This document shows positions 25-9,174 of a stretch of DNA of 64,000 nucleotides, piece by piece. Where the stretch lies: the IMG/VR virus record IMGVR_UViG_3300044213_000107, positions 196,724-260,723 of that record; one strand, written 5' to 3'. The notes beneath the pieces were generated by a model. It saw only the letters and a list, made by a program, of their open reading frames with translations. It was not told the origin of the DNA and ran no database searches. Every line of letters begins with the position of its first letter. Position 1 is the stretch's first letter. The position numbers were made by a program, and so were the translations under genes.

Positions 25-100
25 TGGTGCCGCCTCTAGGTATCGAACCTAATTCTCTAGTGCTTCAAACTAGCGTGAGGACCTCCTTCACCAAAGCGGC
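25..100 (-). tRNA. tRNA-Phe(GAA)
   Basis: Cloverleaf, anticodon arm CTAGT-TTGAAGC-ACTAG, encoded CCA. Confidence 0.88.
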
Positions 101-103
101 ATA

Positions 104-178
104 TGGTCCGGCCACCAGGAATCGAACCTGGATTACAAGATTAGAAGTCTCGGGTATTATCCATTATACGATGGCCAG
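104..178 (-). tRNA. tRNA-Arg(UCU)
   Basis: Anticodon loop CTTCTAA, T-loop TTCGATT, CCA end. Confidence 0.9.
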
Positions 179-213
179 CGTCTGTAAAATGGTGCGCTCG
201 GAGGGACTTGAAC
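175..213 (-). repeat. 39-bp direct repeat copy 1 (T-loop to CCA of tRNA-Ile2 plus spacer; att-like)
   Basis: 37/39 identical to 2214-2252. Confidence 0.9.
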
Positions 214-248
214 ATTTTTATTATTCATTATACGAACGCTAGAGATTT

Positions 249-686
249 TTATAGTATAGCCGATAACCAATCAGTATACAATAAATTTTTATGTATTTTT
301 ATTTTCATTATCCCAGGAAAACTCATAAAGGAATGAGTCTTCCATACCTTGTTGCTTGTATCTTTGTACACAGATATTTTAGATATGCTATTGATAAAAT
401 CTATAGTATCCACTGTTAACCTTTCCAACACAATATATAAATCTTCAGTTATATCATTGTTGGAATCAATTTTTGTGTCTGTTAGTTCCTTATTAACAAA
501 TTCTATTGAAACACTGGTTAAATCAGAATTAACAGGAATATTATAATGATGTATTTCTTCTATATCATTTTTATGTTCAATCGCATATTCGTACACACAT
601 AATTTATTGTTTATAAAAATGTTATATACAGGTTTTTTAGTAGACGTTGAATGGAGTAGCAACGATAGGGATAACTTTTTTGTCAT
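249..686 (-). CDS. hypothetical protein, 145 aa
   Basis: ORF overlapping the end of the radical SAM gene, inside the repeat-flanked cassette. Confidence 0.7.
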   Translation of the reverse strand: MTKKLSLSLLLHSTSTKKPVYNIFINNKLCVYEYAIEHKNDIEEIHHYNIPVNSDLTSVSIEFVNKELTDTKIDSNNDITEDLYIVLERLTVDTIDFINSISKISVYKDTSNKVWKTHSFMSFPGIMKIKIHKNLLYTDWLSAIL

Positions 687-2169
687 TTTGCTTGTGCTCT
701 AAATATTTTTGCTCTAATCCTTCGATCTCTAATAATTTTTCATTTTGTCGGTTGATTTCAGAATAATACCCATATTCCTGCATTACTTCAACAAATCTTT
801 TCCATCTGTTTACTCTAACATCAAATGTATTGTTTACAAATTGTGTGCTAGTCCAGAAAAAATCGCCCCACTGGTCATGCCTATTATGTTCAAGACCGTA
901 TTCATCTGCATATCGTTGCATGAACCCGCTTCCATTTGTTAGCACCATTGGCAAAGATAAAAATACTTTTATCATATTGTTAGTTGTTAAGTGGGCATGA
1001 GTTTTAAGTAAATCGATACTTTGTTGGAAATCATCTTCCGTTTCGGTGGGATATCCTACAAACATTAACCATACTTGTTTTATACCTTTATCAAAACAAT
1101 TTTCAGCAAACCAAGTTATATCTTCATTACTGAATTTCTTCTTCATATCGTTACGAACTTTTTCACTACCCGACTCTATGCCTACTTTAAACAATTTCGC
1201 TCCGGCAGTTGATGCTAGTTTAAAATCTGATTCAGGCATGGATATTTTAGATCGACAAATGGCATAGCCAGAATATTCTATTCTATTGGGAATTTCTTCA
1301 GTTAATACCGTATTCATTAAACGATAATTTGTGATACTCCCATTCACAAGATTGTCAGTAAACTCAAACTTATTAATACCATATTTAGAATGTGTTTCGA
1401 TAATTTCACGTGCTATATCATTACCTTTTCTGTAGACGAATTTTGGCCAAGACGACTGCACATCGCAAAATGTACACTCTCTGACACATCCTTTACTGCC
1501 AGTAACCGGTATAGTTAAATTTTTATTTTTGTAACTTGGATACAATGAAAAATTATATCCTTCCCATGAAGGTGCAGGTGTGTTACTAAGTGCCTCTGCA
1601 GATACAGGAGGTGCAGTGTGTATTCCTTTTTTCTTATTTTGGATGACAGAAATCAAATCATTTTCCGCATCCCCACGATACACAGAATCTATCGGAAGAT
1701 AATCCATGAAATAATTAGCATAATTAATTCCACTGATTCGTTCGTTGTTATCTAGACCTCTGCCACCTATCATTATGTAACTGTTAGGCGATATCTCTCG
1801 AACTATAGTGGATAAAGGTACAACAAAATCTAAACTTTGGCTAGAAAATACAGACAATAAAATTGTATCCGGATTAAAATTTTTTATTTGTTGTTTAACA
1901 GCTTTTCTAAGCCATTTTAAAATTTTTAAAATATTAATGCTATTTGCCGGTCTGTACCCTCTTATGGCAAACATATCTACTATTATATTCCATTGATCTG
2001 CAAATTCGCTAAACAAATCAATATTTAGGTCCCAAACTTTACTATTGTATCCATTATGTTTTAAAATGCCGTTTATAACTGCAGGGCCGTATGGAACATC
2101 TCCGAAACTTTCTATTCCTGTATTAACAACTCTTACTGGAACTACTATTGTAAGGACATTTTTATTCAT
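637..2169 (-). CDS. B12-binding domain radical SAM protein (class B methyltransferase-like)
   Basis: CxxxCxxC motif (CVRECTFC), N-terminal PYGPAVI..IL cobalamin-binding-like region, GIESGSEKVR, GYPTETEDDF. Confidence 0.88.
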   Translation of the reverse strand: MNKNVLTIVVPVRVVNTGIESFGDVPYGPAVINGILKHNGYNSKVWDLNIDLFSEFADQWNIIVDMFAIRGYRPANSINILKILKWLRKAVKQQIKNFNPDTILLSVFSSQSLDFVVPLSTIVREISPNSYIMIGGRGLDNNERISGINYANYFMDYLPIDSVYRGDAENDLISVIQNKKKGIHTAPPVSAEALSNTPAPSWEGYNFSLYPSYKNKNLTIPVTGSKGCVRECTFCDVQSSWPKFVYRKGNDIAREIIETHSKYGINKFEFTDNLVNGSITNYRLMNTVLTEEIPNRIEYSGYAICRSKISMPESDFKLASTAGAKLFKVGIESGSEKVRNDMKKKFSNEDITWFAENCFDKGIKQVWLMFVGYPTETEDDFQQSIDLLKTHAHLTTNNMIKVFLSLPMVLTNGSGFMQRYADEYGLEHNRHDQWGDFFWTSTQFVNNTFDVRVNRWKRFVEVMQEYGYYSEINRQNEKLLEIEGLEQKYLEHKQNDKKVIPIVATPFNVY

Positions 2170-2213
2170 AGTAATATTTAGTAGACTAAACCAACCCAGT
2201 ATACTATCTTATA

Positions 2214-2252
2214 CCAGCATCTGTAAAATGGTGCGCTTGGAGGGACTTGAAC
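2214..2252 (-). repeat. 39-bp direct repeat copy 2
   Basis: Matches 175-213; includes the 3' end of the intact tRNA-Ile2. Confidence 0.9.
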
Positions 2253-2305
2253 CCCCGACCAAGCGATTATGAGTCGCCTGCTCTGACCAACTGAGCTACA
2301 AGCGC
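2229..2305 (-). tRNA. tRNA-Ile2(CAU), lysidine type
   Basis: Anticodon arm GGCGACTCATAATCGCTT as in enterobacterial ileX; CCA. Confidence 0.8.
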
Positions 2306-2311
2306 ATTAAC

Positions 2312-2397
2312 TGGTGCGACTGGCCGGAATCGAACCGGCACGGGAAAATCCCGGCAGATTTTAAGTCTGCTGCGGCTACCGATTACGCCACAGTCGC
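2312..2397 (-). tRNA. tRNA-Leu(UAA)
   Basis: Loop CTTAAAA, long variable arm, CCA. Confidence 0.92.
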
Positions 2398-2403
2398 TTA
2401 TCC

Positions 2404-2479
2404 TGGTGCCGGAGAAAGGAGTCGAACCCTCGACCTTCGCATTACAAGTGCGCTGCTCTACCAACTGAGCTACTCCGGC
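2404..2479 (-). tRNA. tRNA-Thr(UGU)
   Basis: Loop CTTGTAA, canonical D and T arms. Confidence 0.93.
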
Positions 2480-2489
2480 TAAAACTTTT

Positions 2490-2582
2490 TGGCGGAGCGG
2501 GAGGGATTCGAACCCTCGATACAGTTCATCACCGTATGACACCTTAGCAGGGTGCTGACTTCAGCCGCTCATCCACCGCTCC
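2490..2582 (-). tRNA. tRNA-Ser(GCU)
   Basis: Loop CTGCTAA, long variable arm, G discriminator. Confidence 0.92.
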
Positions 2583-2588
2583 AAATCC

Positions 2589-2664
2589 TGGTGGTCAGAA
2601 GAGCACTCGAAGCTCCACATTCATCCTTATGAGGGATGCTCTCTTCCTCTTAAGATATCTGACC
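2589..2664 (-). tRNA. tRNA-Met(CAU), probably elongator, atypical T-stem
   Basis: CATCC-CTCATAA-GGATG; T arm GGAGC-TTCGAGT-GCTCT. Confidence 0.8.
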
Positions 2665-2755
2665 ATATAAAAACACACTCTTATCAATATCCCAGCGGTC
2701 GACTCGGTTTAACAGGGCCCAACGTAGAGGGTCGGGCGAATGTGTTTTTATATGG
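2663..2755 (-). ncRNA. unassigned ~93-nt RNA closed by a 15-bp stem
   Basis: CCATATAAAAACACA ... TGTGTTTTTATATGG inverted repeat around a GC-rich core, between tRNA units. Confidence 0.55.
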
Positions 2756-2790
2756 TAGGAGCACGGGGATTTGAACCCTGAACCTATCAA
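2753..2790 (-). pseudogene. orphan tRNA 3' half (3' anticodon-stem strand, T arm, acceptor strand, CCA)
   Basis: Minus strand TTGATAGGTTCAGGGTTCAAATCCCCGTGCTCCTACCA; the HNH ORF lies where the 5' half would be. Confidence 0.75.
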
Positions 2791-3362
2791 TGACTGAGTA
2801 GTCGTTTTGCCCTGGCGTGGCTAGCACCCTTGTCAGGCAACCCAACACTTCTCAATGCTTCTGAAATAGTATTATGTTTCTTAACAGCCTCTAATAATAC
2901 TTCATCCGGAACAATTCTTTTTTTGTTATTTCTTCCTCGCCAAGTCTTAGTTTTTGAATGACAATTAGGACAAATACATTCTAAATTAGATCGGTCATTA
3001 TTTTTTGTATCACCGTCTTTATGCTCTAATTCTAAAACAATAGGATCACCCATCCATTCTGAAATTCCACAATGGTTACACTTATGACCTTGCTCTTCTA
3101 ATACCCGTCGCTTTCTATTCTCGCTACCTAATTTTTCAAAAGGTGTGGATTGGTATTTCTCTAATGCCCAAGCTGTTGTCTTGGCACTTCGTAATCTTAT
3201 TTCCTCGGTTGTAATTGGAGTTTTTCTAGTCCAACGACCGGCATTAGCAATACTTTTCTTCTTTTTGCTTTCTTCAGTAAACACTCTACTATTTGAACAT
3301 TTTCTAGAACAGAATGTTCCAGGCTTAGTATGTGCTGTATTACATTTAGGACAATTTTTCAT
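2787..3362 (-). CDS. HNH homing endonuclease with N-terminal Zn-finger
   Basis: CxxC..FCSRKC, then CNHC...LELEHKDGDTKNNDRSNLECICPNCH. Confidence 0.9.
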   Translation of the reverse strand: MKNCPKCNTAHTKPGTFCSRKCSNSRVFTEESKKKKSIANAGRWTRKTPITTEEIRLRSAKTTAWALEKYQSTPFEKLGSENRKRRVLEEQGHKCNHCGISEWMGDPIVLELEHKDGDTKNNDRSNLECICPNCHSKTKTWRGRNNKKRIVPDEVLLEAVKKHNTISEALRSVGLPDKGASHARAKRLLSH

Positions 3363-3365
3363 AAT

Positions 3366-3410
3366 ATTGAACTCTTACTTGTTATACTTTATTTATACTT
3401 AAAGTTCAAT
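3366..3410 (-). promoter_or_regulatory. late promoter TATAAATA inside an RBS-sequestering hairpin (HNH gene)
   Basis: ATTGAACT/AGTTCAAT arms flank TATAAATA at 3390-3397. Confidence 0.7.
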
Positions 3411-3426
3411 TTTATCAAAAATCAGT

Positions 3427-3500
3427 TGGTAGGCCCGGAGGGTACTGACCCCTCTTTTACGGATTAAAAGTCCGTTACTTCACCTTAAAGTTTCAAGCCC
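3427..3500 (-). tRNA. tRNA-Lys(UUU), non-canonical
   Basis: ACGGA-CTTTTAA-TCCGT; A8 instead of U8; T-loop GTCAGTA. Confidence 0.8.
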
Positions 3501-3505
3501 GTATG

Positions 3506-3580
3506 TGGTCCTTGCTCAGAGAATCGAACTCTGTTAGTCCGGGTAAGAGCCGGATACTTCGCCAGCAAAGTTTAGCAAGG
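3506..3580 (-). tRNA. tRNA-Lys(CUU)
   Basis: TCCGG-CTCTTAC-CCGGA; same A8 and ACTT/AAGT D-stem as its neighbour. Confidence 0.85.
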
Positions 3581-3589
3581 ATGGTTTGT

Positions 3590-3639
3590 ATTAACGAGTT
3601 CTTTAATGTCTTACAAACATATTAAAGAGTTCTTTAATG
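3590..3639. repeat. two 19-nt near-palindromic direct repeats
   Basis: ATTAACGAGTTCTTTAATG (3590-3608) and ATTAAAGAGTTCTTTAATG (3621-3639). Confidence 0.75.
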
Positions 3640-3676
3640 TGCCATCCCAGGACCAATACGGGGTCTTAGGATGACA

Positions 3677-3697
3677 CTACTGTTTACCTTGTTTCAT
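3677..3697 (-). CDS. six-codon leader ORF MKQGKQ
   Basis: AAAGGAA RBS, ATG AAA CAA GGT AAA CAG TAG, followed immediately by a 15-bp hairpin (3640-3676). Confidence 0.5.
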   Translation of the reverse strand: MKQGKQ

Positions 3698-3724
3698 GTC
3701 AAATTCCTTTGTGTTAAAAATGCT

Positions 3725-3753
3725 ATTATACAACTATCACAGCCAGTTGTCAA
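3725..3753 (-). promoter_or_regulatory. consensus sigma70 promoter
   Basis: TTGACA-N17-TATAAT. Confidence 0.85.
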
Positions 3754-3761
3754 CTGTTTTT

Positions 3762-3836
3762 TGGTACCCGGTGCTGGAATTGAACCAGCGACCCTTGCGT
3801 TATCAGCACAATGCTCTACCCCTGAGCTAACCGGGT
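3762..3836 (-). tRNA. tRNA-Ile(GAU)
   Basis: Loop CTGATAA. Confidence 0.92.
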
Positions 3837-3854
3837 ATTTTAATAAATATGTGT

Positions 3855-4034
3855 ATGATCTCTGAAGAAATTGAAAACTCTTGGAAATACTTGTATAGAT
3901 TCGTAGACGAATCCTACAAACCAAAATCATTTTGGTGTACACCCAGCGAGTTCAAACTTGAAGAACTGCCACAAATTGGTACCTCCGGAGAGACTCGAAC
4001 TCCCGACTCTTTCGTTCGTAGCGAAATACTCTAA
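3855..4034 (+). CDS. small hypothetical or remnant ORF running antisense into tRNA-Arg
   Basis: TAAATA-N5-ATG start; 3' third overlaps the tRNA. Confidence 0.35.
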   Translation: MISEEIENSWKYLYRFVDESYKPKSFWCTPSEFKLEELPQIGTSGETRTPDSFVRSEIL

Positions 4035-4053
4035 TCCACTGAGTTACGGAGGC
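3977..4053 (-). tRNA. tRNA-Arg(ACG)
   Basis: TTTCG-CTACGAA-CGAAA. Confidence 0.92.
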
Positions 4054-4056
4054 ATA

Positions 4057-4131
4057 TGGGGTGCGATACGAGAATCGAACTCGCGATAGCGGAATCACAA
4101 CCCGCGGTTTTGCCACTAAACTAATCACACC
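4057..4131 (-). tRNA. tRNA-His(GUG)
   Basis: Loop TTGTGAT, G-1:C73. Confidence 0.92.
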
Positions 4132-4165
4132 ATATCAATAAATACTTGCAGGTACCAAGATAAGT

Positions 4166-4744
4166 ATGGAACACAATTTAAATCTACAATATACACAAAT
4201 ACGTGATTATGTATTTGCATTATCTATACAATTTCCTTACTCCGACGAAGAAATTTTATCTGCAGCAAATACCGAGATTCTTGAACGATGGGTTGGTCCC
4301 GGTGATAGGTACCGAACAAATTCTCCACAATCTAAAATATTAAAAGATATATTTGAAATATTTAAAGATCCTGCGATATTTAAACAACAAATATTAGATA
4401 CGTTATACGCCACTGAAAAATACAAATATTTCTGGATTCGCAGCAAACAAGATTTGTTTACATCTTCAAGATTAAGTGTCGCACTCTACAAAGATTCTGC
4501 CAAATATTATTTAAAAAATCACCTGGATCCAAGAGACGTTATTGTATCAGGAATGTATTATCTCACAAAGTCAGATTTACAATATACAACAATCTACACT
4601 TCGGAAAATAATGATAATCCAATACAACTACTACCCAGTCAATACCAAGGTTGGATGTTAGCCAACACTGAAAATAGTTGGCACGATGGCAGAAATGAAG
4701 ATTCTGTTGATAGGATTGCCATTTATTATGATTTGTATCTATAA
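4166..4744 (+). CDS. 2OG-Fe(II) oxygenase family protein
   Basis: HxD (NHLD) ... SWHDG ... R facial-triad pattern. Confidence 0.7.
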   Translation: MEHNLNLQYTQIRDYVFALSIQFPYSDEEILSAANTEILERWVGPGDRYRTNSPQSKILKDIFEIFKDPAIFKQQILDTLYATEKYKYFWIRSKQDLFTSSRLSVALYKDSAKYYLKNHLDPRDVIVSGMYYLTKSDLQYTTIYTSENNDNPIQLLPSQYQGWMLANTENSWHDGRNEDSVDRIAIYYDLYL

Positions 4745-4746
4745 CT

Positions 4747-4820
4747 TGGCGACCCATGAAGGAATCGAACCTCCGTCCTTAGTTTTGGAGACTAGTACAC
4801 TACCATTGTGCTAATGGGCC
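4747..4820 (-). tRNA. tRNA-Trp(CCA)
   Basis: Loop CTCCAAA. Confidence 0.92.
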
Positions 4821-4824
4821 AAAT

Positions 4825-4910
4825 TGGTGGAAGTCCAGGGACTCGAACCCCGTATGCCGTAAGACGTCGGATTTACAGTCCGATGCAGTAACCTGTTCTG
4901 CTCGACTTCC
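4825..4910 (-). tRNA. tRNA-Tyr(GUA)
   Basis: Loop CTGTAAA, variable arm. Confidence 0.92.
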
Positions 4911-4916
4911 TTTATG

Positions 4917-5001
4917 TGGTGCGGATGGTGAGACTCGAACTCACACACCTTACGGTAATGGCTTCTAAGACCATCTCGGCTACCAGTTACGACACATCCG
5001 C
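4917..5001 (-). tRNA. tRNA-Leu(UAG)
   Basis: Loop CTTAGAA, variable arm. Confidence 0.92.
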
Positions 5002-5008
5002 AAAAACT

Positions 5009-5082
5009 TGGAGCGGGATAGGAGAATCGAACTCCTAACTAAACCTTGGCAAGGTTTCGTTTGACCATTAAACTAATCCCGC
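5009..5082 (-). tRNA. tRNA-Gly(GCC)
   Basis: AAACC-TTGCCAA-GGTTT, U discriminator. Confidence 0.92.
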
Positions 5083-5095
5083 AACTCCGAAAACA

Positions 5096-5171
5096 TGGCT
5101 GTCTAGGCAGGGATCGAACCTACGACAGGGTGATTAACAGTCACCTGCTCTACCAACTGAGCTACTAGACA
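5096..5171 (-). tRNA. tRNA-Asn(GUU)
   Basis: Loop CTGTTAA. Confidence 0.92.
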
Positions 5172-5183
5172 ATATTTATACTC

Positions 5184-5257
5184 TGGTGCCTCGTGACAGA
5201 ATCGAACTGCCGTCTGCACCGTGTAAGGATGCGGCCCTACCATTAGACGAACGAGGC
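5184..5257 (-). tRNA. tRNA-Val(UAC)
   Basis: Loop CTTACAC. Confidence 0.9.
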
Positions 5258-5329
5258 GAAATTTGGCGCCGATTTTTGTCATTTTAACTGAGGCTAACGA
5301 GCACTCCCTCAGATTAGTTGCAACTTATT

Positions 5330-5403
5330 TGGTGGAGAAGGAGAGAATCGAACTCTCAATTGAAGCTTGCAAAGCTACCGTTATCCCATTTAACTACATC
5401 CCC
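5330..5403 (-). tRNA. tRNA-Ala(UGC)
   Basis: Loop TTTGCAA, G3:U70. Confidence 0.88.
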
Positions 5404-5407
5404 AAAA

Positions 5408-5557
5408 TTATTCTTTAGTTTGTTCTTTGTGTTCTAGTAGTTTTTGTTGATATTGATCTTCAGTTAAACCATGCCAACCACAACACTTACCGTCTGGGCT
5501 ACGGCCACAACCGCATTTACCAATGTCTTCTGCATTTTCTTGTACTCTCATTTGCAT
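5408..5557 (-). CDS. 49-aa CDGSH-like (2Fe-2S or Zn) mini-protein, absent from the ORF track
   Basis: AAAGGAA RBS; MQMRVQENAEDIGKCGCGRSPDGKCCGWHGLTEDQYQQKLLEHKEQTKE. Confidence 0.7.
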   Translation of the reverse strand: MQMRVQENAEDIGKCGCGRSPDGKCCGWHGLTEDQYQQKLLEHKEQTKE

Positions 5558-5577
5558 GCATTTCCTTTATTAAAAAA

Positions 5578-5654
5578 TGGTCCGTGTGACACGATTCGAA
5601 CATGCGACCACCTGGTCCCAAACCAGGAGCTCTACCAGGCTGAGCTACACACGG
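5578..5654 (-). tRNA. tRNA-Pro(UGG)
   Basis: CCTGG-TTTGGGA-CCAGG. Confidence 0.92.
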
Positions 5655-5659
5655 AAAAC

Positions 5660-5734
5660 TGGATGCGGGAGACGGAATTGCACCGCCGATCTTCAGGTTA
5701 TGAGCCTGATGAGTTACTACTTCTCCATCCCGCG
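5660..5734 (-). tRNA. tRNA-fMet(CAU), initiator-like
   Basis: C1:A72 mismatch, loop CTCATAA. Confidence 0.8.
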
Positions 5735-5742
5735 ATAAACAA

Positions 5743-5816
5743 TGGTAAGGGAACTAGGAATCGAACCTAGAATAGCAGAATCAAAATCTGTTGTGATACC
5801 ATTTCACTATTCCCCA
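5743..5816 (-). tRNA. tRNA-Gln(UUG)
   Basis: Loop TTTTGAT. Confidence 0.88.
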
Positions 5817-5822
5817 ACGATG

Positions 5823-5898
5823 TGGTACTCGGTAGGGAATTCGAATCCCTGTTCACGCCGTGAAAGGGCGTTGTCCTAGGCCTCTAGACGAACCGAGC
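5823..5898 (-). tRNA. tRNA-Glu(UUC)
   Basis: ACGCC-CTTTCAC-GGCGT. Confidence 0.92.
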
Positions 5899-5907
5899 AT
5901 ACTTGTT

Positions 5908-5986
5908 TGGCGACTTGTAGGGGATTTGAACCCCTGATCTCTACCGTGACAGGGTAGCGCATTAAGCCAGACTATGCTAACAAGCC
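5908..5986 (-). tRNA. tRNA-Asp(GUC)
   Basis: CTACC-CTGTCAC-GGTAG. Confidence 0.92.
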
Positions 5987-5991
5987 AAATT

Positions 5992-6229
5992 CTCTATATG
6001 TAAACATACCTAAGGAACTCTTGAACAATATGGACTCTGCCGGCACCACGGGTTCGTCTCCCGATTGGGTTCATTCGTTATTACAGCCTACATGATCTGT
6101 CAGTACACTCGTACAGTATCTTGCGATCCGTAACTACCTTCATGTGCACTGCATACTCCGCCCCGGCGAGCTGTCCCCTTTGCAAGCACCTAACAGTATA
6201 GGTAACCTTTTGTACGTTTACATATAGAG
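5992..6229 (-). ncRNA. unassigned ~238-nt structured RNA
   Basis: 14-bp terminal stem CTCTATATGTAAAC/GTTTACATATAGAG, GC-rich interior, ATC-GCAA-GAT tetraloop hairpin. Confidence 0.6.
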
Positions 6230-6263
6230 GCTATTGTTTACAATAGCTTATATGTGATTAACT

Positions 6264-6433
6264 TTTTAAAGAACACAGTTAATTGCTTAACAAGCATGTA
6301 TTGTAACACCTTTTTGGACAATTAGCAAGTGTTTTTTACTGCTGTTGCTGATTTGCTACAACGTTTGTTCGATAACAAACTAGTTAATTTCTTAACTTGT
6401 ATCTATTATAGCACCAAATAATAACCCGCACAA
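6264..6433 (-). promoter_or_regulatory. tandem sigma70 promoters, each with a GNRA hairpin, then a boxA-like site
   Basis: TTGTGC-N17-TATAAT (6433-6405); TTGCTA-N17-TACAAT (6328-6300); GTTAA-GAAA/GCAA-TTAAC; TGTTCTTTAAAA (6275-6264). Confidence 0.7.
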
Positions 6434-6466
6434 TCTTCGGGTTTTGGGTGTTGTTTTTTAATAACA

Positions 6467-6489
6467 TGGAGTAGGTGACAGGACTTGAA
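6467..6489 (-). pseudogene. orphan tRNA 3' fragment (T-loop to UCCA)
   Basis: Minus strand TTCAAGTCCTGTCACCTACTCCA, truncated at the T-loop next to the HNH-like gene. Confidence 0.7.
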
Positions 6490-6524
6490 ATATATATTAT
6501 TTCGTTTTGAACATAAATAATAAC

Positions 6525-7310
6525 ATGAACACCTGTCAACAATGTACTTCATTATTTGCTCAAACTCCTGGAACGTACGGTAAATTTTGCTCTGTATCCT
6601 GTAGTAGTAAGTTTAATAATAAAATTAGACGCCAACAGACTACGGAAAACTATTTATTAAATCCAAAAGTTTGTAAAAATTGCAATTCAATCATAAATTA
6701 TTCTCAAAGAAAAAGTAATATTTTTTGTAGCCGATCCTGCGCCGCTGTGTTTAATAATGCCAAAAAAGATTGGACTAATATTAAAACTGGGCCGACACCT
6801 AAACAAAAGGCACCGAAATTAAAAAGAAAAGCGAGAACTAATACTATCCCAGATGCAGACGGACCATACACTATTATATACCTATGCACTTGCAAATTTA
6901 CTGGAAAAAAATGGTACTCCCCAACAGTTAAGACCATACACCCATCAACAATATCAACTAAAAAATTGTATTCTTATCAATGTAGATTTAACTTTGGTAT
7001 TAAGTCGTACCCTGAATGGTTTGCTTATGCATCAAATTTAATAAACACTAACGGCTGGTACTCAGCCTCTAATAGAGGTAATAATTTATCTGGATGTTCT
7101 CGTGATCATTTGTATTCAGTATCGGATGGATACAAAAACAATATAGATCCTAAAATAATATCTCATCCTGCAAACTGTGAGATAATTCCGCACAGGAAAA
7201 ATCAGAGTAAAAACAAGACTTCGTCGATTACATTAGAAGAACTAAAAGAAAGAATCAAAAAATTTAATCAAAAATATTTGGAGATGCCAGATGGGGTCGA
7301 GCCATCCTAG
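6525..7310 (+). CDS. Zn-finger repeat / HNH-like homing endonuclease
   Basis: Two CxxC..FCSxSC motifs; C-terminal SRDH...HPANCEIIPHRKNQSK; start moved to the ATG after TAAATA-N5. Confidence 0.75.
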   Translation: MNTCQQCTSLFAQTPGTYGKFCSVSCSSKFNNKIRRQQTTENYLLNPKVCKNCNSIINYSQRKSNIFCSRSCAAVFNNAKKDWTNIKTGPTPKQKAPKLKRKARTNTIPDADGPYTIIYLCTCKFTGKKWYSPTVKTIHPSTISTKKLYSYQCRFNFGIKSYPEWFAYASNLINTNGWYSASNRGNNLSGCSRDHLYSVSDGYKNNIDPKIISHPANCEIIPHRKNQSKNKTSSITLEELKERIKKFNQKYLEMPDGVEPS

Positions 7311-7352
7311 AAAGTTTTGCAGGCTTCCACCTAACCGCTCGGACATGGCATC
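7279..7352 (-). tRNA. tRNA-Cys(GCA), divergent T-loop
   Basis: Loop CTGCAAA, U discriminator; overlapped antisense by the HNH-like ORF end. Confidence 0.8.
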
Positions 7353-7402
7353 GTAATATAAAAATTTTAGTGTGGTAGTTCGGCGCACACCTACATAATA
7401 AA

Positions 7403-7495
7403 TGGTGGAAGCGGTGAGACTCGAACTCACACACCCTGTTGAGAGCCCTCAGTTTTCAAGACTGCTGCCGCTATGCCGATTCGGCTAACGCTTCC
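7403..7495 (-). tRNA. tRNA-Ser(UGA)
   Basis: Loop CTTGAAA, long variable arm. Confidence 0.9.
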
Positions 7496-7497
7496 AA

Positions 7498-8679
7498 TTA
7501 TACTGGGAATACTTCCCTAAAATTTGTTTTTCTTATACGATCTAACATACCAATATATTCGTTAAATGTATTGATTAAGTTAGGATTGTGCACAGCATTT
7601 TCCAATGAGTTTATTGTAAATTTAATCGCTGATATATAGTTATATCGCAGATAATGCGTTAAAGGAATCTGAGATTTTAGTTCTTGCAAATCGAGAATAA
7701 ATTGATTTCTTTGTGCATCTGTTAACACTTCTATGTCTAAATATGGTTTAGACATTAATCTACCAACATTCACAGCATATGAGTTATCAACACAATATTG
7801 AATTAATGGTATCAACGCCCAGAAACTTGTATACTGTAGTGTATGGCCAATGGTAATAGGATTATTAGGCCATGTAGGATTAGGACGTGTGGCTAATTTT
7901 TTAATATTAGCATCTACGGTTGCCCACTCACTACCATATCTAACATATTCTGTATGTTGCTCGGTACCTTCTAAACTTACAACTATTGCAACAGATTTAA
8001 ATTTTGAAATACAATCGTATACTTCATCTGTTAATGTTGTACCGTTTGTGGTAACTGTTAAATTTAATTGCTCCGGATGCGGAATGCTTTTTAACATTGC
8101 AATAGCATTAGGAGTTATAAGTGGCTCGCCACCTGTTAAAAAAATATGTTCAACATTTTCTAATAGTCGAGGCTCCAGCTCTTGATATTCATCTGTTTCA
8201 AACCAATTTCTTTTTTGTATAAATTGATCATCATGAGTTAAGTGAACAAAATTTTTATATTGTTCTCTATTCATTTTTACTTCAGTTTCTATACTAGAAC
8301 TGCAATAAGGATTACACATTATACATTTTAAATTACAGTGATTGCCAAATTCAACATGTAAATGTTTTATGCCATAAGATTTATCTGGTGAAAAATCTTG
8401 TCTAATAAAATTTTCAAATGTGCGATTACCATTTATTCTGTACGACGATGATCCATTGTCTTCTTCGTCCCAACAACGACTACAACCTTCATGTCTTTGG
8501 CCATTGTCTAGTTCTTGACTAATTTTAATAACTTTTGTTTGTCGCCAACGATCAAATTGATCATATTTATCAACCAAATTACCATCTTTTATTTGATAAT
8601 TACAACAAGGTGTAAGTGTGCCGTCTGTGCGAATATTAACACCAATATGCGAATGTATACAAAATGTTTCTTGATTCAT
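7498..8679 (-). CDS. radical SAM protein with N-terminal SPASM/twitch-like Cys cluster
   Basis: CNLKCIMC, TGGEPL, TTNGT; N-terminal C..PCC..CxxC; start moved to MNQETFC. Confidence 0.88.
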   Translation of the reverse strand: MNQETFCIHSHIGVNIRTDGTLTPCCNYQIKDGNLVDKYDQFDRWRQTKVIKISQELDNGQRHEGCSRCWDEEDNGSSSYRINGNRTFENFIRQDFSPDKSYGIKHLHVEFGNHCNLKCIMCNPYCSSSIETEVKMNREQYKNFVHLTHDDQFIQKRNWFETDEYQELEPRLLENVEHIFLTGGEPLITPNAIAMLKSIPHPEQLNLTVTTNGTTLTDEVYDCISKFKSVAIVVSLEGTEQHTEYVRYGSEWATVDANIKKLATRPNPTWPNNPITIGHTLQYTSFWALIPLIQYCVDNSYAVNVGRLMSKPYLDIEVLTDAQRNQFILDLQELKSQIPLTHYLRYNYISAIKFTINSLENAVHNPNLINTFNEYIGMLDRIRKTNFREVFPV

Positions 8680-8709
8680 AGTGATATTTATATGCAACAT
8701 ATATTGTAA

Positions 8710-8804
8710 TATTCTAAAACTGATTAGTTTCGGGAGATGTCCGTCCTATACAACCGGCCCTTTCAATGAGCCTGTAAAATATTCTTCTACTCAGTTTTAG
8801 AATA
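8710..8804 (-). ncRNA. unassigned ~95-nt RNA closed by a 14-bp stem
   Basis: TATTCTAAAACTGA ... TCAGTTTTAGAATA. Confidence 0.5.
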
Positions 8805-8812
8805 CCCTTTAT

Positions 8813-8943
8813 TGCTAGAGGATATGATAGGGTCAATACCCTACCCAGGAGTCTTACTAATCGGTTTCCGCCCGACGTTCATGTATCCTGTCCGCCCGTT
8901 TGTGCTAGTTAAAGTGAGCACGGGACCTCGTTTCCCTTGAGCA
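8813..8943 (-). ncRNA. unassigned multibranch structured RNA
   Basis: GC-rich island with nested helices CCCG-TGCT/AGCA-CGGG, CAGGA/TCCTG, TCGG/CCGA, TAGGGT/ACCCTA. Confidence 0.55.
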
Positions 8944-8951
8944 CTCGATTC

Positions 8952-9101
8952 TTAGCGTTTTTGCATCTTGCCTGCAAGTTTTTTTATTGCAGCAATATGC
9001 AGTTCTGCTCTACGTACTTTACTCTCTATTAAAGCAACTCGTTGTTCTGGTGTTAGAACATGTTGCTCTTTGAGAGGTTTAGTATTCTTTTTTTCTAACA
9101 T
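8952..9101 (-). CDS. 49-aa basic helical protein, absent from the ORF track
   Basis: AAAGGAAA RBS; MLEKKNTKPLKEQHVLTPEQRVALIESKVRRAELHIAAIKKLAGKMQKR. Confidence 0.7.
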   Translation of the reverse strand: MLEKKNTKPLKEQHVLTPEQRVALIESKVRRAELHIAAIKKLAGKMQKR

Positions 9102-9114
9102 CTTTTTCCTTTGT

Positions 9115-9153
9115 AAAAAACAAAACCCCGGAGTGTTTAGTTCCGGGGTTCTG
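9115..9153 (-). terminator. intrinsic terminator of the candidate attenuator
   Basis: CAGAACCCCGGA-loop-TCCGGGGTTTTG followed by a U-tract. Confidence 0.88.
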
Positions 9154-9174
9154 TGAATCTCAACTAAACAGTTA

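What the first reader, a model, noticed from the sequence alone, without database searches (positions are those of the whole stretch)
8813..8943. Compact multibranch structured RNA downstream of the attenuator
A non-coding GC-rich island in AT-rich surroundings with several nested helices: CCCG-TGCT/AGCA-CGGG, CAGGA/TCCTG enclosing a TCGG/CCGA hairpin, TAGGGT-ATTG-ACCCTA, and a weak outer TGCT..AGG/CCT..AGCA pairing. It does not resemble tRNA, tmRNA, RNase P RNA or a hammerhead by eye. It is a candidate new phage ncRNA, riboswitch or ribozyme.
Basis: partly seen in the sequence, partly recalled or inferred. Interest (0 to 1): 0.62.

Follow-up and report, generated by a model that had tools for sequence, protein, structure and literature searches.

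The report
Pseudoknotted RNA heading phage tRNA arrays
The GC-rich island is a real, strongly conserved structured RNA, read on the minus strand and about 237 nt long; it sits at the head of the tRNA gene arrays of many uncultured freshwater jumbo phages, matches no Rfam family, and has no known function.

Summary
The RNA lies on the minus strand, the same strand as the tRNAs, and spans about 8946-8710.

Pattern scans found it in 266 loci, giving 232 distinct core sequences from viral and metagenome contigs.

Covariation supports the following parts:
- Hairpin P1, NNGGA[AACGNGR]UCCNN.
- Hairpin P2, whose loop (CACU) pairs with an upstream AGUG to form an H-type pseudoknot.
- A long-range pair between the last P1 loop base and the Y of RAAYGGGCGG: G:C in 208 sequences, A:U in 23, G:A in 1.
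- Stem P3 with hairpin P3.1.
- In the window's subclass, hairpins P4' and P5' (GNRA-capped) and a long stem P6.

Of 158 distinct loci with enough flank, 153 have tRNA genes within 3 kb downstream. The median distance is 230 nt, and all 1401 downstream tRNAs are on the same strand. A conserved 45-60 aa single-helix ORF usually ends 6-8 nt upstream.

There is no Rfam hit, no match in GenBank phages, and no model hit on the T4 rnaC/rnaD region. No RNA-seq data were available.

Function is inferred only. My best guess is a position-dependent leader module of the tRNA-array transcript. A trans-acting RNP, a ribozyme and a riboswitch all remain open.

The parts
8710..8946 (-). Whole structured RNA element: the 5' core (PK, P1, P2, J2/3, P3) plus the 3' domain (P4', P5', P6)
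   Evidence: The covariance model R1 matches window 8816-8967 (-) at 61 bits, E = 1.5e-12, and this is the only significant copy in the 260.7-kb record. The 3' domain was aligned with subclass relatives.
8942..8946 (-). PKa, 5' strand of the pseudoknot (GAGUG); pairs with CACUU at 8916-8912
   Evidence: AGUG/CACU pairs are found in 47 of 50 own sequences against 0 of 7 in other classes. Compensatory variants are AAUG/CAUU, AGAUG/CAUCU, AGUAU/AUACU, AGUGCU/AGCACU and AUGUG/CACAU.
8922..8936 (-). Hairpin P1: GGGA (8936-8933) pairs with UCCC (8925-8922); 7-nt loop AACGAGG (8932-8926)
   Evidence: In 232 distinct sequences the pair -1:x is A-U 149, G-C 32, C-G 12, G.U 11, U-A 9. The pair -2:y is C-G 103, G-C 34, U-A 28. 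The pair s3:t1 is A-U 206, U-A 15, C-G 8. Whole-stem swaps GGA/UCC to AGU/ACU, GGC/GCC and AGC/GCU also occur.
8902..8921 (-). Hairpin P2: GUGCU (8921-8917) pairs with AGCAC (8906-8902). The loop CACUUUAACU carries PKb (8916-8912) and an A-rich 3' part
   Evidence: Four of the five P2 pairs have compensatory changes in 20-35 of 63 sequences.
8892..8901 (-). Single strand J2/3, AAACGGGCGG (family consensus RAAYGGGCGG). C8898 forms a long-range pair with G8926, the last base of the P1 loop
   Evidence: The pair l7:b4 is G:C 208, A:U 23, G:A 1 in 232 distinct sequences. GGGCGG stays nearly invariant even when loci are found through the 3' domain only.
8846..8890 (-). P3: CAGGA (8890-8886) pairs with UCCUG (8850-8846). 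It encloses an internal loop and hairpin P3.1, UCGG (8875-8872) with CCGA (8864-8861), loop GCGGAAA
   Evidence: All 7 P3 pairs and all 4 P3.1 pairs show changes on both sides. For example, UCGG/CCGA in the window is UCUGUG/CACAGA in L009.
8826..8845 (-). Hairpin P4' (GGUAGGGU-AUUG-ACCCUAUC), present only in the window's subclass
   Evidence: RNAalifold on 14 subclass sequences shows compensatory changes such as G-C to A-U and G.U to C-G.
8802..8825 (-). Hairpin P5': AUAUCCUCUA with UAAAGGGUAU, one C.A mismatch in the window, capped by the GNRA loop GCAA (8815-8812)
   Evidence: Eight of its 10 pairs (11 of the 18 pairs of P4' and P5' together) have compensatory changes. Loops are GCAA, GAAA or GUAA in six of the 14 sequences; in the others the loop region is longer.
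8710..8804 (-). Long stem P6 (8804-8791 with 8723-8710) around a variable 67-nt insert. In relatives it ends a few nt before the first tRNA or before one more hairpin
   Evidence: The base UAUUCUAAAA/UUUUAGAAUA is conserved while the distal part covaries: CUGA/UCAG here against UACACC/GGUGUG in L009. In the majority class GUAUUAAAGC/GCUUUAAUAC becomes GUAUCGAAGC/GCUUCGAUAC.
8952..9101 (-). Conserved small ORF (49 aa), family motif HxLTxEQRxxLIxxKxxRA. Its stop codon ends 6 nt before the AGUG of PKa (5 nt before GAGUG)
   Evidence: A family alignment was made. The ORF lies directly upstream in 93 of 185 distinct loci, and the stop-to-PKa spacing is 6-8 nt in 57 of 93. The AF2 model is one long helix, residues 18-48, mean pLDDT 85. 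No Pfam or PHROG family matches.
9120..9154 (-).
   Evidence: It is seen in the sequence, gives a weak Rfam leader-type hit caused by the terminator, and has the same hairpin and loop in L006, L035, L008 and L050.
7498..8700 (-). Radical SAM/SPASM-like gene lying between the RNA and the tRNA array in this phage only
   Evidence: Pfam PF04055, E = 9e-13. Relatives L007, L008 and L009 have tRNAs directly after the RNA.
25..7495 (-). tRNA array: 24 ARAGORN calls plus 2 Rfam-only calls, all on the minus strand

Best explanation

Shown:
- The fold is made of hairpins P1 and P2 locked together by two long-range contacts. One is the 5' strand AGUG pairing with the P2 loop. The other is the last P1 loop base pairing with the Y of RAAYGGGCGG.
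- After this core come P3 with P3.1 and a variable 3' domain that runs almost up to the first tRNA.
- The element is always on the tRNA strand and almost always upstream of every tRNA. It is usually preceded within 6-8 nt by the stop codon of a conserved small helical-protein gene, or otherwise by a terminator U-run.

Inferred mechanism:
- The RNA is transcribed together with the small ORF and the array.
- Once the terminating ribosome leaves, the 5' strand is free and the double-pseudoknot core folds.
- The folded module acts in cis, in a position-dependent way, as the leader of the untranslated array. It would mark, insulate or protect the junction between upstream mRNA (or read-through transcript) and the tRNA precursor, probably by binding a factor. 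The co-encoded small protein is the obvious candidate.
- Where a tRNA follows directly, RNase P cleavage at that tRNA would release the module as a discrete RNA.
For: Reality of the RNA:
- The element was found in 266 loci, giving 232 distinct cores.
- In the covariance-model alignment 93% of cells are paired against 67% in shuffles. The covariation score is 0.651 against 0.18 (0 of 500 shuffles reach it), and slid controls give at most 0.115.
- P1 covaries and so does the pseudoknot.
- The tertiary pair is G:C 208, A:U 23.
- P4' and P5' covary.
- G.U pairs make the structure strand-specific.

Position:
- 153 of 158 distinct loci have tRNAs within 3 kb downstream, at a median of 230 nt, and 88% are within 500 nt.
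- All 1401 downstream tRNAs are on the same strand.
- Only 11 of 110 loci have a tRNA within 1 kb upstream.
- The identity of the first tRNA varies widely (Ala, Tyr, Cys, Asp, Glu, Ile, Ser, Lys, Met, Arg, Asn, Pro, Trp), yet the RNA stays first.
- It also stays first when an ORF has been inserted between it and the array, as in the window.

Other context:
- The small ORF is linked to the RNA and tightly spaced from it.
- GNRA-capped hairpins and about 16 invariant unpaired bases suggest a compact tertiary fold or a binding surface.
Against: - There is no transcript evidence. Only DNA runs hold the sequence.
- Neither the 5' end, the 3' end nor the promoter is known. The nearest sigma-70-like site (9336-9308) lies upstream of a terminator-like hairpin.
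- A purely protective leader would not need so many invariant unpaired bases.
- In about 12% of loci, including the window, no tRNA follows within 500 nt, so RNase P cannot define the 3' end there.
- The small ORF is not always adjacent (93 of 185), and in L009's contig it lies several kb from the RNA.
- Terminator-like sites are not enriched inside the window's array (7 found, 6.3 expected), and a perfect sigma-70 consensus promoter sits inside it. The array may therefore not be a single transcription unit.
- All homologues were found by pattern scans, so sampling is biased towards conserved blocks.
Confidence: 0.35

Rival explanations
1. The element is a stable trans-acting small RNA or RNP. 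It is co-transcribed with the tRNAs, cut out by RNase P and another nuclease, and acts elsewhere, for example on the host translation or defence machinery. It may work in complex with the co-encoded small helical protein. This would be analogous to T4 rnaC/rnaD or to GOLLD and ROOL.
For: - The fold is elaborate, with GNRA caps and invariant loops.
- Its 3' end abuts the first tRNA in most loci.
- A small basic single-helix protein gene is adjacent in half of the loci.
- There is precedent for structured RNAs of unknown function near phage tRNA islands (bioRxiv 10.1101/2024.12.08.627333) and inside the T4 tRNA cluster.
Against: - The head-of-array position is strict despite shuffled tRNA order. 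A trans-acting RNA could sit anywhere in the array, and the T4 RNAs sit at the distal end.
- There is no homology to the T4 RNAs, GOLLD or ROOL.
- There are no expression data.
Confidence: 0.25
2. The element is a new self-cleaving ribozyme, or a dedicated processing signal, that severs the tRNA precursor from the upstream mRNA or read-through transcript.
For: - The core is a compact double pseudoknot of about 75-110 nt with many invariant unpaired bases.
- It sits exactly at the mRNA/tRNA boundary, 6-8 nt after a stop codon or directly after a U-run.
- Phage HDV-like theta ribozymes next to tRNAs are a precedent (PMC10879173, listed).
Against: - No Rfam ribozyme family matches even at E up to 10.
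- The strand order PKa-P1-P2a-PKb-P2b is not the HDV nested double pseudoknot.
- The prior for a new ribozyme class is low.
- Nothing here tests cleavage.
Confidence: 0.1
3. The element is a riboswitch whose aptamer (PK-P1-P2-J2/3-P3) senses a metabolite or ion and gates transcription into the tRNA array.
For: The pattern of invariant junction bases inside covarying helices and pseudoknots is typical of aptamers. The element lies upstream of the unit it would control.
Against: - No intrinsic terminator or anti-terminator follows. P6 and P7 are not followed by a U-run.
- Most copies have no ORF or ribosome-binding site downstream to regulate.
- No Rfam riboswitch matches.
- The 'ACGAGG' resemblance to the guanidine-III riboswitch, recalled from memory, fails. 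Here those bases form a hairpin loop, not the linker of the pseudoknot.
Confidence: 0.1
4. The element is a processive antitermination RNA, like put or nut. It would bind RNA polymerase directly or through the small protein and make it resistant to Rho or intrinsic terminators across the long untranslated array.
For: - It sits promoter-proximally at the head of a long untranslated operon.
- A small basic helical protein is encoded next to it.
- It keeps this position when ORFs are inserted downstream.
Against: - The only strong terminator nearby lies upstream of the RNA, so the RNA cannot help polymerase pass it.
- Terminator-like sites are not enriched in the window's array.
- Where a tRNA follows directly, RNase P cleavage would sever the tether needed for cis action.
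- It does not resemble put, nut or EAR: Rfam gives no match of any kind.
Confidence: 0.1
5. The element is a recoding or termination signal for the small ORF, or a DNA-level element such as a promoter or protein-binding palindromes, or hidden coding sequence.
For: The pseudoknot starts 6-8 nt after the stop codon, a spacing typical of read-through and frameshift stimulators. The P2 loop resembles a T4-late-like TATAAA(T/C)A box in some members.
Against: - All three stop codons are used, and the in-frame extension has a median of 5 codons with no conservation.
- Thirty-nine loci keep the RNA without the ORF.
- Indels that are not multiples of three, together with compensatory changes, rule out coding.
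- Strand-specific G.U pairs and pseudoknot covariation are not expected for a duplex-DNA site.
Confidence: 0.03

Closest known systems
T4 rnaC / rnaD (species 1 and 2 RNAs)
   Same: They are non-tRNA RNAs of about 120-140 nt encoded on the tRNA strand inside a myovirus tRNA cluster. That they are co-transcribed with the tRNAs and that their function is still unknown is from my own knowledge. The window's phage has a major capsid protein whose matches include many phages of Escherichia, Klebsiella, Synechococcus and other hosts.
   Different: The T4 RNAs lie at the distal end of the cluster, after tRNA-Arg, whereas this RNA lies at the head. The family model gives no hit on the T4 region above 6.2 bits, and none on rnaC or rnaD. 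The size and the pseudoknotted core also differ.
GOLLD and ROOL RNAs
   Same: They are elaborate, pseudoknotted RNAs of phages and prophages, 'often near tRNA islands', of unknown function. GOLLD was first found in lake metagenomes (bioRxiv 10.1101/2024.12.08.627333).
   Different: GOLLD exceeds 800 nt in many members, and ROOL, from my own knowledge, is about 500-600 nt; this RNA is about 150-240 nt. Neither Rfam model matches. Their position relative to tRNAs is loose, whereas this RNA is fixed at the head.
HDV-like theta ribozymes of gut phages
   Same: They are small pseudoknotted RNAs next to phage tRNA genes, proposed to take part in tRNA maturation (PMC10879173, listed).
   Different: The topology differs. 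Here the 3' pseudoknot strand lies inside the P2 loop, and a hairpin-loop to linker pair replaces the HDV P1.1/P2 nesting. No Rfam HDV-type hit was found, and cleavage was not tested.
Phage antiterminator RNAs (HK022 put, lambda nut)
   Same: They are cis-acting structured RNAs near the start of long phage operons. Lambda nut works with a small basic protein encoded nearby. This comparison rests on established knowledge, not on a test made here.
   Different: put is two simple stem-loops, and nut is boxA plus a small boxB hairpin. Neither has a double pseudoknot. No sequence or structural similarity was found, and function was not tested.
Unnamed candidate structured RNAs predicted from IMG/VR (Fremin et al. 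2023, PMC10690425)
   Same: That screen used the same data source (IMG/VR) and the same kind of evidence (covariation). It reports 8495 DNA-virus candidates, so this family may be among them.
   Different: The paper's text describes no head-of-tRNA-array motif. Its supplementary tables are not held here, so membership could not be checked.

Membership tests
Any Rfam 15 family (4227 models) | A covariance-model score at or near the family's gathering threshold | tested here: not met
   There is no hit on 8700-8955 on either strand, at gathering score or at E up to 10. Eight other family members give only tRNA and tmRNA hits.
tRNA / tmRNA | A cloverleaf or tRNA-like domain detectable by ARAGORN or by Rfam RF00005 and the tmRNA models | tested here: not met
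ARAGORN and Rfam tRNAs in the window, none in 8701-8951.
T4 rnaC/rnaD | Sequence and structure homology to the T4 species 1 and 2 RNAs | tested here: not met
   Model R1 was run with filters off on T4 68000-76000. The best score was 6.2 bits, and no hit fell on rnaC or rnaD.
T4 rnaC/rnaD | Encoded within a phage tRNA cluster on the tRNA strand | tested here: met
   The strand and adjacency requirements are met, although this RNA lies at the proximal end and the T4 RNAs at the distal end.
GOLLD / ROOL | A match to the Rfam models and a length above about 500 nt | tested here: not met
   No Rfam hit was found. The conserved element is about 150-240 nt.
HDV-like (theta) ribozyme | A nested double pseudoknot with strand order P1-P2-P3-P3'-P1'-P4-P2', cleaving at its 5' edge | tested here: not met
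   The strand order here is PKa-P1-P1'-P2-PKb-P2'. No Rfam HDV-type hit was found. Cleavage itself cannot be tested with these tools.
Guanidine-III (ykkC-III) riboswitch | A 41-nt H-type pseudoknot with ACGAGG in the linker, usually upstream of a guanidine exporter gene (recalled from memory) | tested here: not met
   Here ACGNGR forms the loop of hairpin P1. No Rfam hit at E up to 10. The downstream context is tRNAs.
Recoding pseudoknot (stop-codon read-through or -1 frameshift) | A pseudoknot 5-9 nt after the recoded codon | tested here: met
   The spacing from the stop codon to PKa is 6-8 nt in 57 of 93 loci.
Recoding pseudoknot (stop-codon read-through or -1 frameshift) | A conserved extended reading frame downstream | tested here: not met
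   The median in-frame extension is 5 codons, and TAA, TGA and TAG are all used. Thirty-nine loci have the RNA without the ORF.
put/nut-type antiterminator RNA | It confers terminator resistance on RNA polymerase in cis | not testable with these tools
   Only position can be assessed. The head-of-operon position is met. Terminator-like sites are not enriched downstream in the window.

The most novel reading that the evidence does not exclude
The double-pseudoknot core, with about 16 invariant unpaired bases, is a catalytic or ligand-binding RNA of a new class. It would be either a self-cleaving ribozyme that detaches the tRNA precursor from upstream mRNA, or a riboswitch that gates expression of phage tRNA arrays. 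In either case jumbo-phage tRNA supply would be controlled by a dedicated RNA device.
Probability: 0.2. Interest if true: 0.9.

Novelty: new variant of a known kind. Interest (0 to 1): 0.72.

Why it matters
Large phages carry tRNA arrays whose expression and processing are barely understood. Structured RNAs found next to such arrays (T4 rnaC/rnaD, GOLLD, ROOL) have resisted functional explanation for years.

This family is small enough for biochemistry and rich in covariation, with two long-range contacts. It has a fixed position, always first in the array, and often a candidate protein partner. These features give concrete, testable hypotheses: cis leader, RNP, ribozyme or riboswitch.

It also adds a well-supported family that could be submitted to Rfam. 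That would improve annotation of several hundred viral and metagenome contigs and give a marker for one clade of uncultured freshwater jumbo phages.

Tried and rejected
- Rfam at gathering score and at E up to 10, on the window and on eight relatives, gave nothing but tRNA and tmRNA.
- blastn and megablast against GenBank phages found no match.
- Model R1 was run on four cultured jumbo phages with 65-69% identical capsid protein (PA5oct, Vibrio 2.275.O, Phosso, pEa_SNUABM_19). Only noise came back, at E about 0.27.
- Model R1 on the T4 tRNA region also gave only noise.
- The exact pattern in one genome per prokaryotic species gave one hit, on a 1.9-kb contig of a Bacteroidetes MAG. I take this as probable phage DNA and at most a weak host hint.
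- RNA evidence: the run search returned only DNA runs.
- My own first model of P2 with an outer CCYG/CGGG helix (used to build R1) was rejected after the relaxed scans.
- I first read a '-10-like' motif upstream of PKa. It turned out to be the stop codon of the small ORF.
- The sigma-70 promoter and terminator scans gave nothing decisive.
- The resemblances to RNase P CR-I (GGAAAGUCC), the sarcin-ricin loop, boxA and guanidine-III were recalled from memory and are not supported by Rfam or by the topology.
- The small ORF has no Pfam or PHROG family. Its AF2 model is a single helix, too simple for a fold search.
- The supplementary tables of PMC10690425 are not held.
Full report
**Context.** The window is the last 64 kb of a 260.7-kb IMG/VR jumbo-phage record that is about 74% complete. 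PHROG hits to tail sheath, tail tube and major head protein show it is a myovirus. Its capsid protein is 65-69% identical to those of Pseudomonas phage PA5oct, Vibrio phage 2.275.O, Sinorhizobium phage Phosso and Erwinia phage pEa_SNUABM_19.

Genes around the finding run on the minus strand. In transcription order they are:
- a terminator-like hairpin with a U-run, 9154-9120;
- a 49-aa ORF, 9101-8952;
- a 251-nt non-coding spacer, 8951-8701, which contains the finding;
- a radical-SAM/SPASM-like gene, 8700-7498 (Pfam PF04055, E = 9e-13);
- an array of 24-26 tRNA genes from 7495 downwards.

**The observation.** GC content rises to 49-52% at 8800-8950, against about 22-38% around it. Folding the 131 nt alone is unremarkable: z = -0.78 on the + strand and -1.37 on the - strand. 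The whole spacer on the minus strand folds better than all 200 shuffles, z = -3.28. ARAGORN and Rfam find nothing in the spacer, at gathering score or at E up to 10.

**Homologues.**
- A 24-mer from the element and a neighbouring 533-aa protein gave four related contigs. Their alignment showed a conserved core, AGTGYT..GGAAACGAGGTCCYG..CAAACGGGCGG.
- A gapped pattern built on that core hit 85 IMG/VR contigs.
- A relaxed pattern hit more than 120 viral contigs, and a related pattern more than 120 metagenome contigs.
- A pattern taken only from the 3' part of the RNA hit 115 viral contigs.
- In all I hold 266 loci with 202 distinct cores by one definition, and 232 distinct cores after the last scan.
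- The same core pattern occurs once in one-genome-per-species prokaryote contigs, on a 1.9-kb contig of a Bacteroidetes MAG.
- blastn finds nothing in GenBank phages. The family model finds nothing in four cultured relatives.
- Public runs that hold the window's sequence are freshwater metagenomes, and all are DNA.

**Structure.** A covariance model (R1) matched every locus searched exactly once. The window's copy scored lowest, at 61 bits and E = 1.5e-12, and is the only significant copy in its own genome.

On the model alignment of 63 sequences:
- 93% of cells are paired, against 67% in column shuffles;
- the covariation score is 0.651 against 0.18, reached by 0 of 500 shuffles, and slid controls give at most 0.115;
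- 15 of the 20 pairs have changes on both sides.

That alignment supports the P2 stem, P3 and P3.1. The two bases before GGAAAC covary with the two bases after UCC: CA/UG, GA/UC, GU/AC, UA/UA, CC/GG, AG/CU. When loci are collected through the 3' domain only, even the supposedly invariant GGA/UCC changes in a compensatory way, to AGU/ACU, GGC/GCC, GGU/ACC and AGC/GCU. UCC therefore pairs with GGA in a hairpin, P1, whose 7-nt loop has the consensus AACGNGR.

The 5' strand AGUG pairs with CACU in the P2 loop. AGUG is present upstream in 47 of 50 CACU sequences and in 0 of 7 of the other classes. Matched variants occur: AAUG/CAUU, AGAUG/CAUCU, AGUAU/AUACU, AGUGCU/AGCACU and AUGUG/CACAU. The mean longest helix is 5.6 bp, against 3.9 with shuffled upstream sequence.

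A mutual-information scan over 232 distinct cores found one more contact. The last P1 loop base and the fourth base of the linker RAAYGGGCGG are G:C in 208 sequences, A:U in 23 and G:A in 1. The core is thus two adjacent hairpins tied together by two long-range interactions, and about 16 of its unpaired bases hardly vary.

After the core come P3 and then a long stem, P6, whose base is conserved and whose distal part covaries. P3 has an internal loop, GGAUGRA opposite AAAAAU, in most members. In the window's subclass two extra hairpins, P4' and P5', lie between P3 and P6. Eleven of their 18 pairs show compensatory changes, and P5' carries a GNRA loop.

**Window coordinates (minus strand).**
- PKa 8946-8942.
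- P1 8936-8922.
- P2 8921-8902, with PKb at 8916-8912.
- Linker 8901-8892, with C8898 pairing to G8926.
- P3 8890-8846, with P3.1 at 8876-8860.
- P4' 8845-8826.
- P5' 8825-8802.
- P6 8804-8710.

The many G.U pairs would be C.A mismatches on the other strand, so the functional strand is that of the tRNAs.

TGCT/AGCA, CAGGA/TCCTG with TCGG/CCGA, and TAGGGT/ACCCTA are right. CCCG/CGGG and the outer TGCT..AGG/CCT..AGCA helix are not supported.

**Genomic context across the family.** Among 158 distinct loci with at least 700 nt downstream, 153 have tRNA genes within 3 kb. The median distance from GGAAAC to the first tRNA is 230 nt (quartiles 192-312), and 88% lie within 500 nt. All 1401 downstream tRNAs are on the same strand. 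Only 11 of 110 loci have a tRNA within 1 kb upstream. The first tRNA differs widely between phages, so the arrays have been reshuffled while the RNA stayed first. Two loci have a beta-proteobacterial-type tmRNA gene 0.7-0.95 kb upstream.

Directly upstream, 93 of 185 distinct loci encode a conserved 45-60-aa protein with the motif HxLTxEQRxxLIxxKxxRA. The window's 49-aa ORF is a member. Its AF2 model is one long helix with a Lys-rich disordered N-terminus. It has no Pfam or PHROG family. Its stop codon ends 6-8 nt before PKa in 57 of 93 cases. There is no conserved read-through frame: the median extension is 5 codons and all three stop codons are used. Thirty-nine further loci lack the ORF and have a U-run within 45 nt upstream instead. 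In one such phage a homologue of the ORF lies several kb away on the same strand. A terminator-like hairpin usually precedes the small ORF as well, which leaves no room for a sigma-70 promoter.

**What it is and how it may work.** Shown: the element is a conserved, strand-specific, intricately folded RNA that occupies the head of phage tRNA arrays. Everything beyond that is inference.

The strict head position, kept despite reshuffled arrays and despite a gene inserted downstream in this window, argues for a position-dependent role in cis. A merely co-transcribed trans-acting RNA would not need it. My best guess, at about 0.35, is a leader module of the array transcript:
- It folds once the ribosome has left the nearby stop codon.
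- It binds a factor, with the adjacent small helical protein as the obvious candidate.
- It marks, insulates or protects the junction between the upstream mRNA and the untranslated tRNA precursor.
- It is released when RNase P cuts the first tRNA.

The rivals are:
- a stable trans-acting RNA or RNP, at about 0.25;
- a new self-cleaving ribozyme, 0.1;
- a riboswitch, 0.1, weakened by the lack of any terminator-type platform;
- put/nut-like antitermination, 0.1, weakened because the only strong terminator lies upstream of the RNA and none is enriched downstream;
- recoding, DNA-level or coding readings, about 0.03.

**Comparison with known systems.** The closest analogues by context are T4 rnaC/rnaD and GOLLD/ROOL. 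T4 rnaC/rnaD lie inside the T4 tRNA cluster but at its distal end, and the family model finds nothing there. GOLLD and ROOL are phage RNAs 'often near tRNA islands' of unknown function, but they are far larger and do not match. HDV-like theta ribozymes of gut phages also sit next to tRNAs (PMC10879173), but their strand topology differs.

A 2023 screen predicted 8495 unnamed structured-RNA candidates from IMG/VR (PMC10690425). This family could be among them, but the tables are not held here. I therefore rate the finding as a new family within a known kind of thing, namely structured RNAs attached to phage tRNA islands.

**Caveats.**
- All homologues come from pattern scans, so conservation of the anchoring blocks is partly by construction. 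The scan anchored on the 3' domain reduces this bias but does not remove it.
- Model E-values are rough.
- R-scape was not available.
- There are no transcript data.
- The hosts are unknown. The only hints are beta-type tmRNAs in two relatives and one Bacteroidetes MAG contig.

Noticed in passing
window 8952-9101 (-): This is a conserved small ORF family of 45-60 aa with the motif HxLTxEQRxxLIxxKxxRA. AF2 predicts a single long helix with a Lys-rich disordered N-terminus, and no Pfam or PHROG family matches. It lies directly upstream of the RNA in about half of the loci and is a possible protein partner.
   Followed up: partly
window 9120-9154 (-): This is a strong terminator-like hairpin with a U-run. 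Its loop (AACUAAACACU) is conserved in relatives L006, L035, L008 and L050. It abuts the small ORF's ribosome-binding site and leaves no room for a sigma-70 promoter. The nearest promoter-like site is 9336-9308 (TTGACG-17-TACAAT), so the unit may be entered by read-through or attenuation.
   Followed up: partly
window 7498-8700 (-): A 400-aa radical SAM protein with an N-terminal SPASM-like Cys-rich region is inserted between the RNA and the tRNA array in this phage only. Its nearest IMG/VR relatives are about 25% identical.
   Followed up: partly
window 3725-3753 (-): A perfect sigma-70 consensus promoter (TTGACA-17-TATAAT, 12 of 12) lies inside the tRNA array. The array may therefore have internal promoters.
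   Followed up: no
window 3430-3500 and 7282-7352 (-): Rfam calls two tRNA-like sequences here (44 and 37.6 bits) that ARAGORN does not. The second overlaps the 3' end of a plus-strand 267-aa ORF (6507-7310) whose C-terminal part looks HNH-nuclease-like by eye.
   Followed up: no
L049:5161-5486 and L083:6368-6724: Phage-encoded tmRNA genes that score best with the betaproteobacterial model lie 0.7-0.95 kb upstream of the RNA in two relatives. This is a hint at the host group.
   Followed up: no
L091 (CAINFN010000107.1, 1963 bp): This is the only hit in one-genome-per-species prokaryote contigs, a short contig binned into an uncultured Bacteroidetes MAG. It scores 131.8 bits with model R1. It is probably phage DNA, and at most a weak host hint.
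   Followed up: partly
window 3613-3728 (-): Model R1 gives a weak second hit in the window's own genome (14.7 bits, E = 0.2), inside the tRNA region. I take it as noise.
   Followed up: no
majority-class loci, e.g. L033:5500-5530, L016:1420-1445: In the majority class an extra hairpin capped by GAAA (ACACACAUUG-GAAA-CAGUGUGU) lies between stem P6 and the first tRNA. Some P6 inserts contain a T-arm-like GGGUUCAUCC sequence.
   Followed up: no
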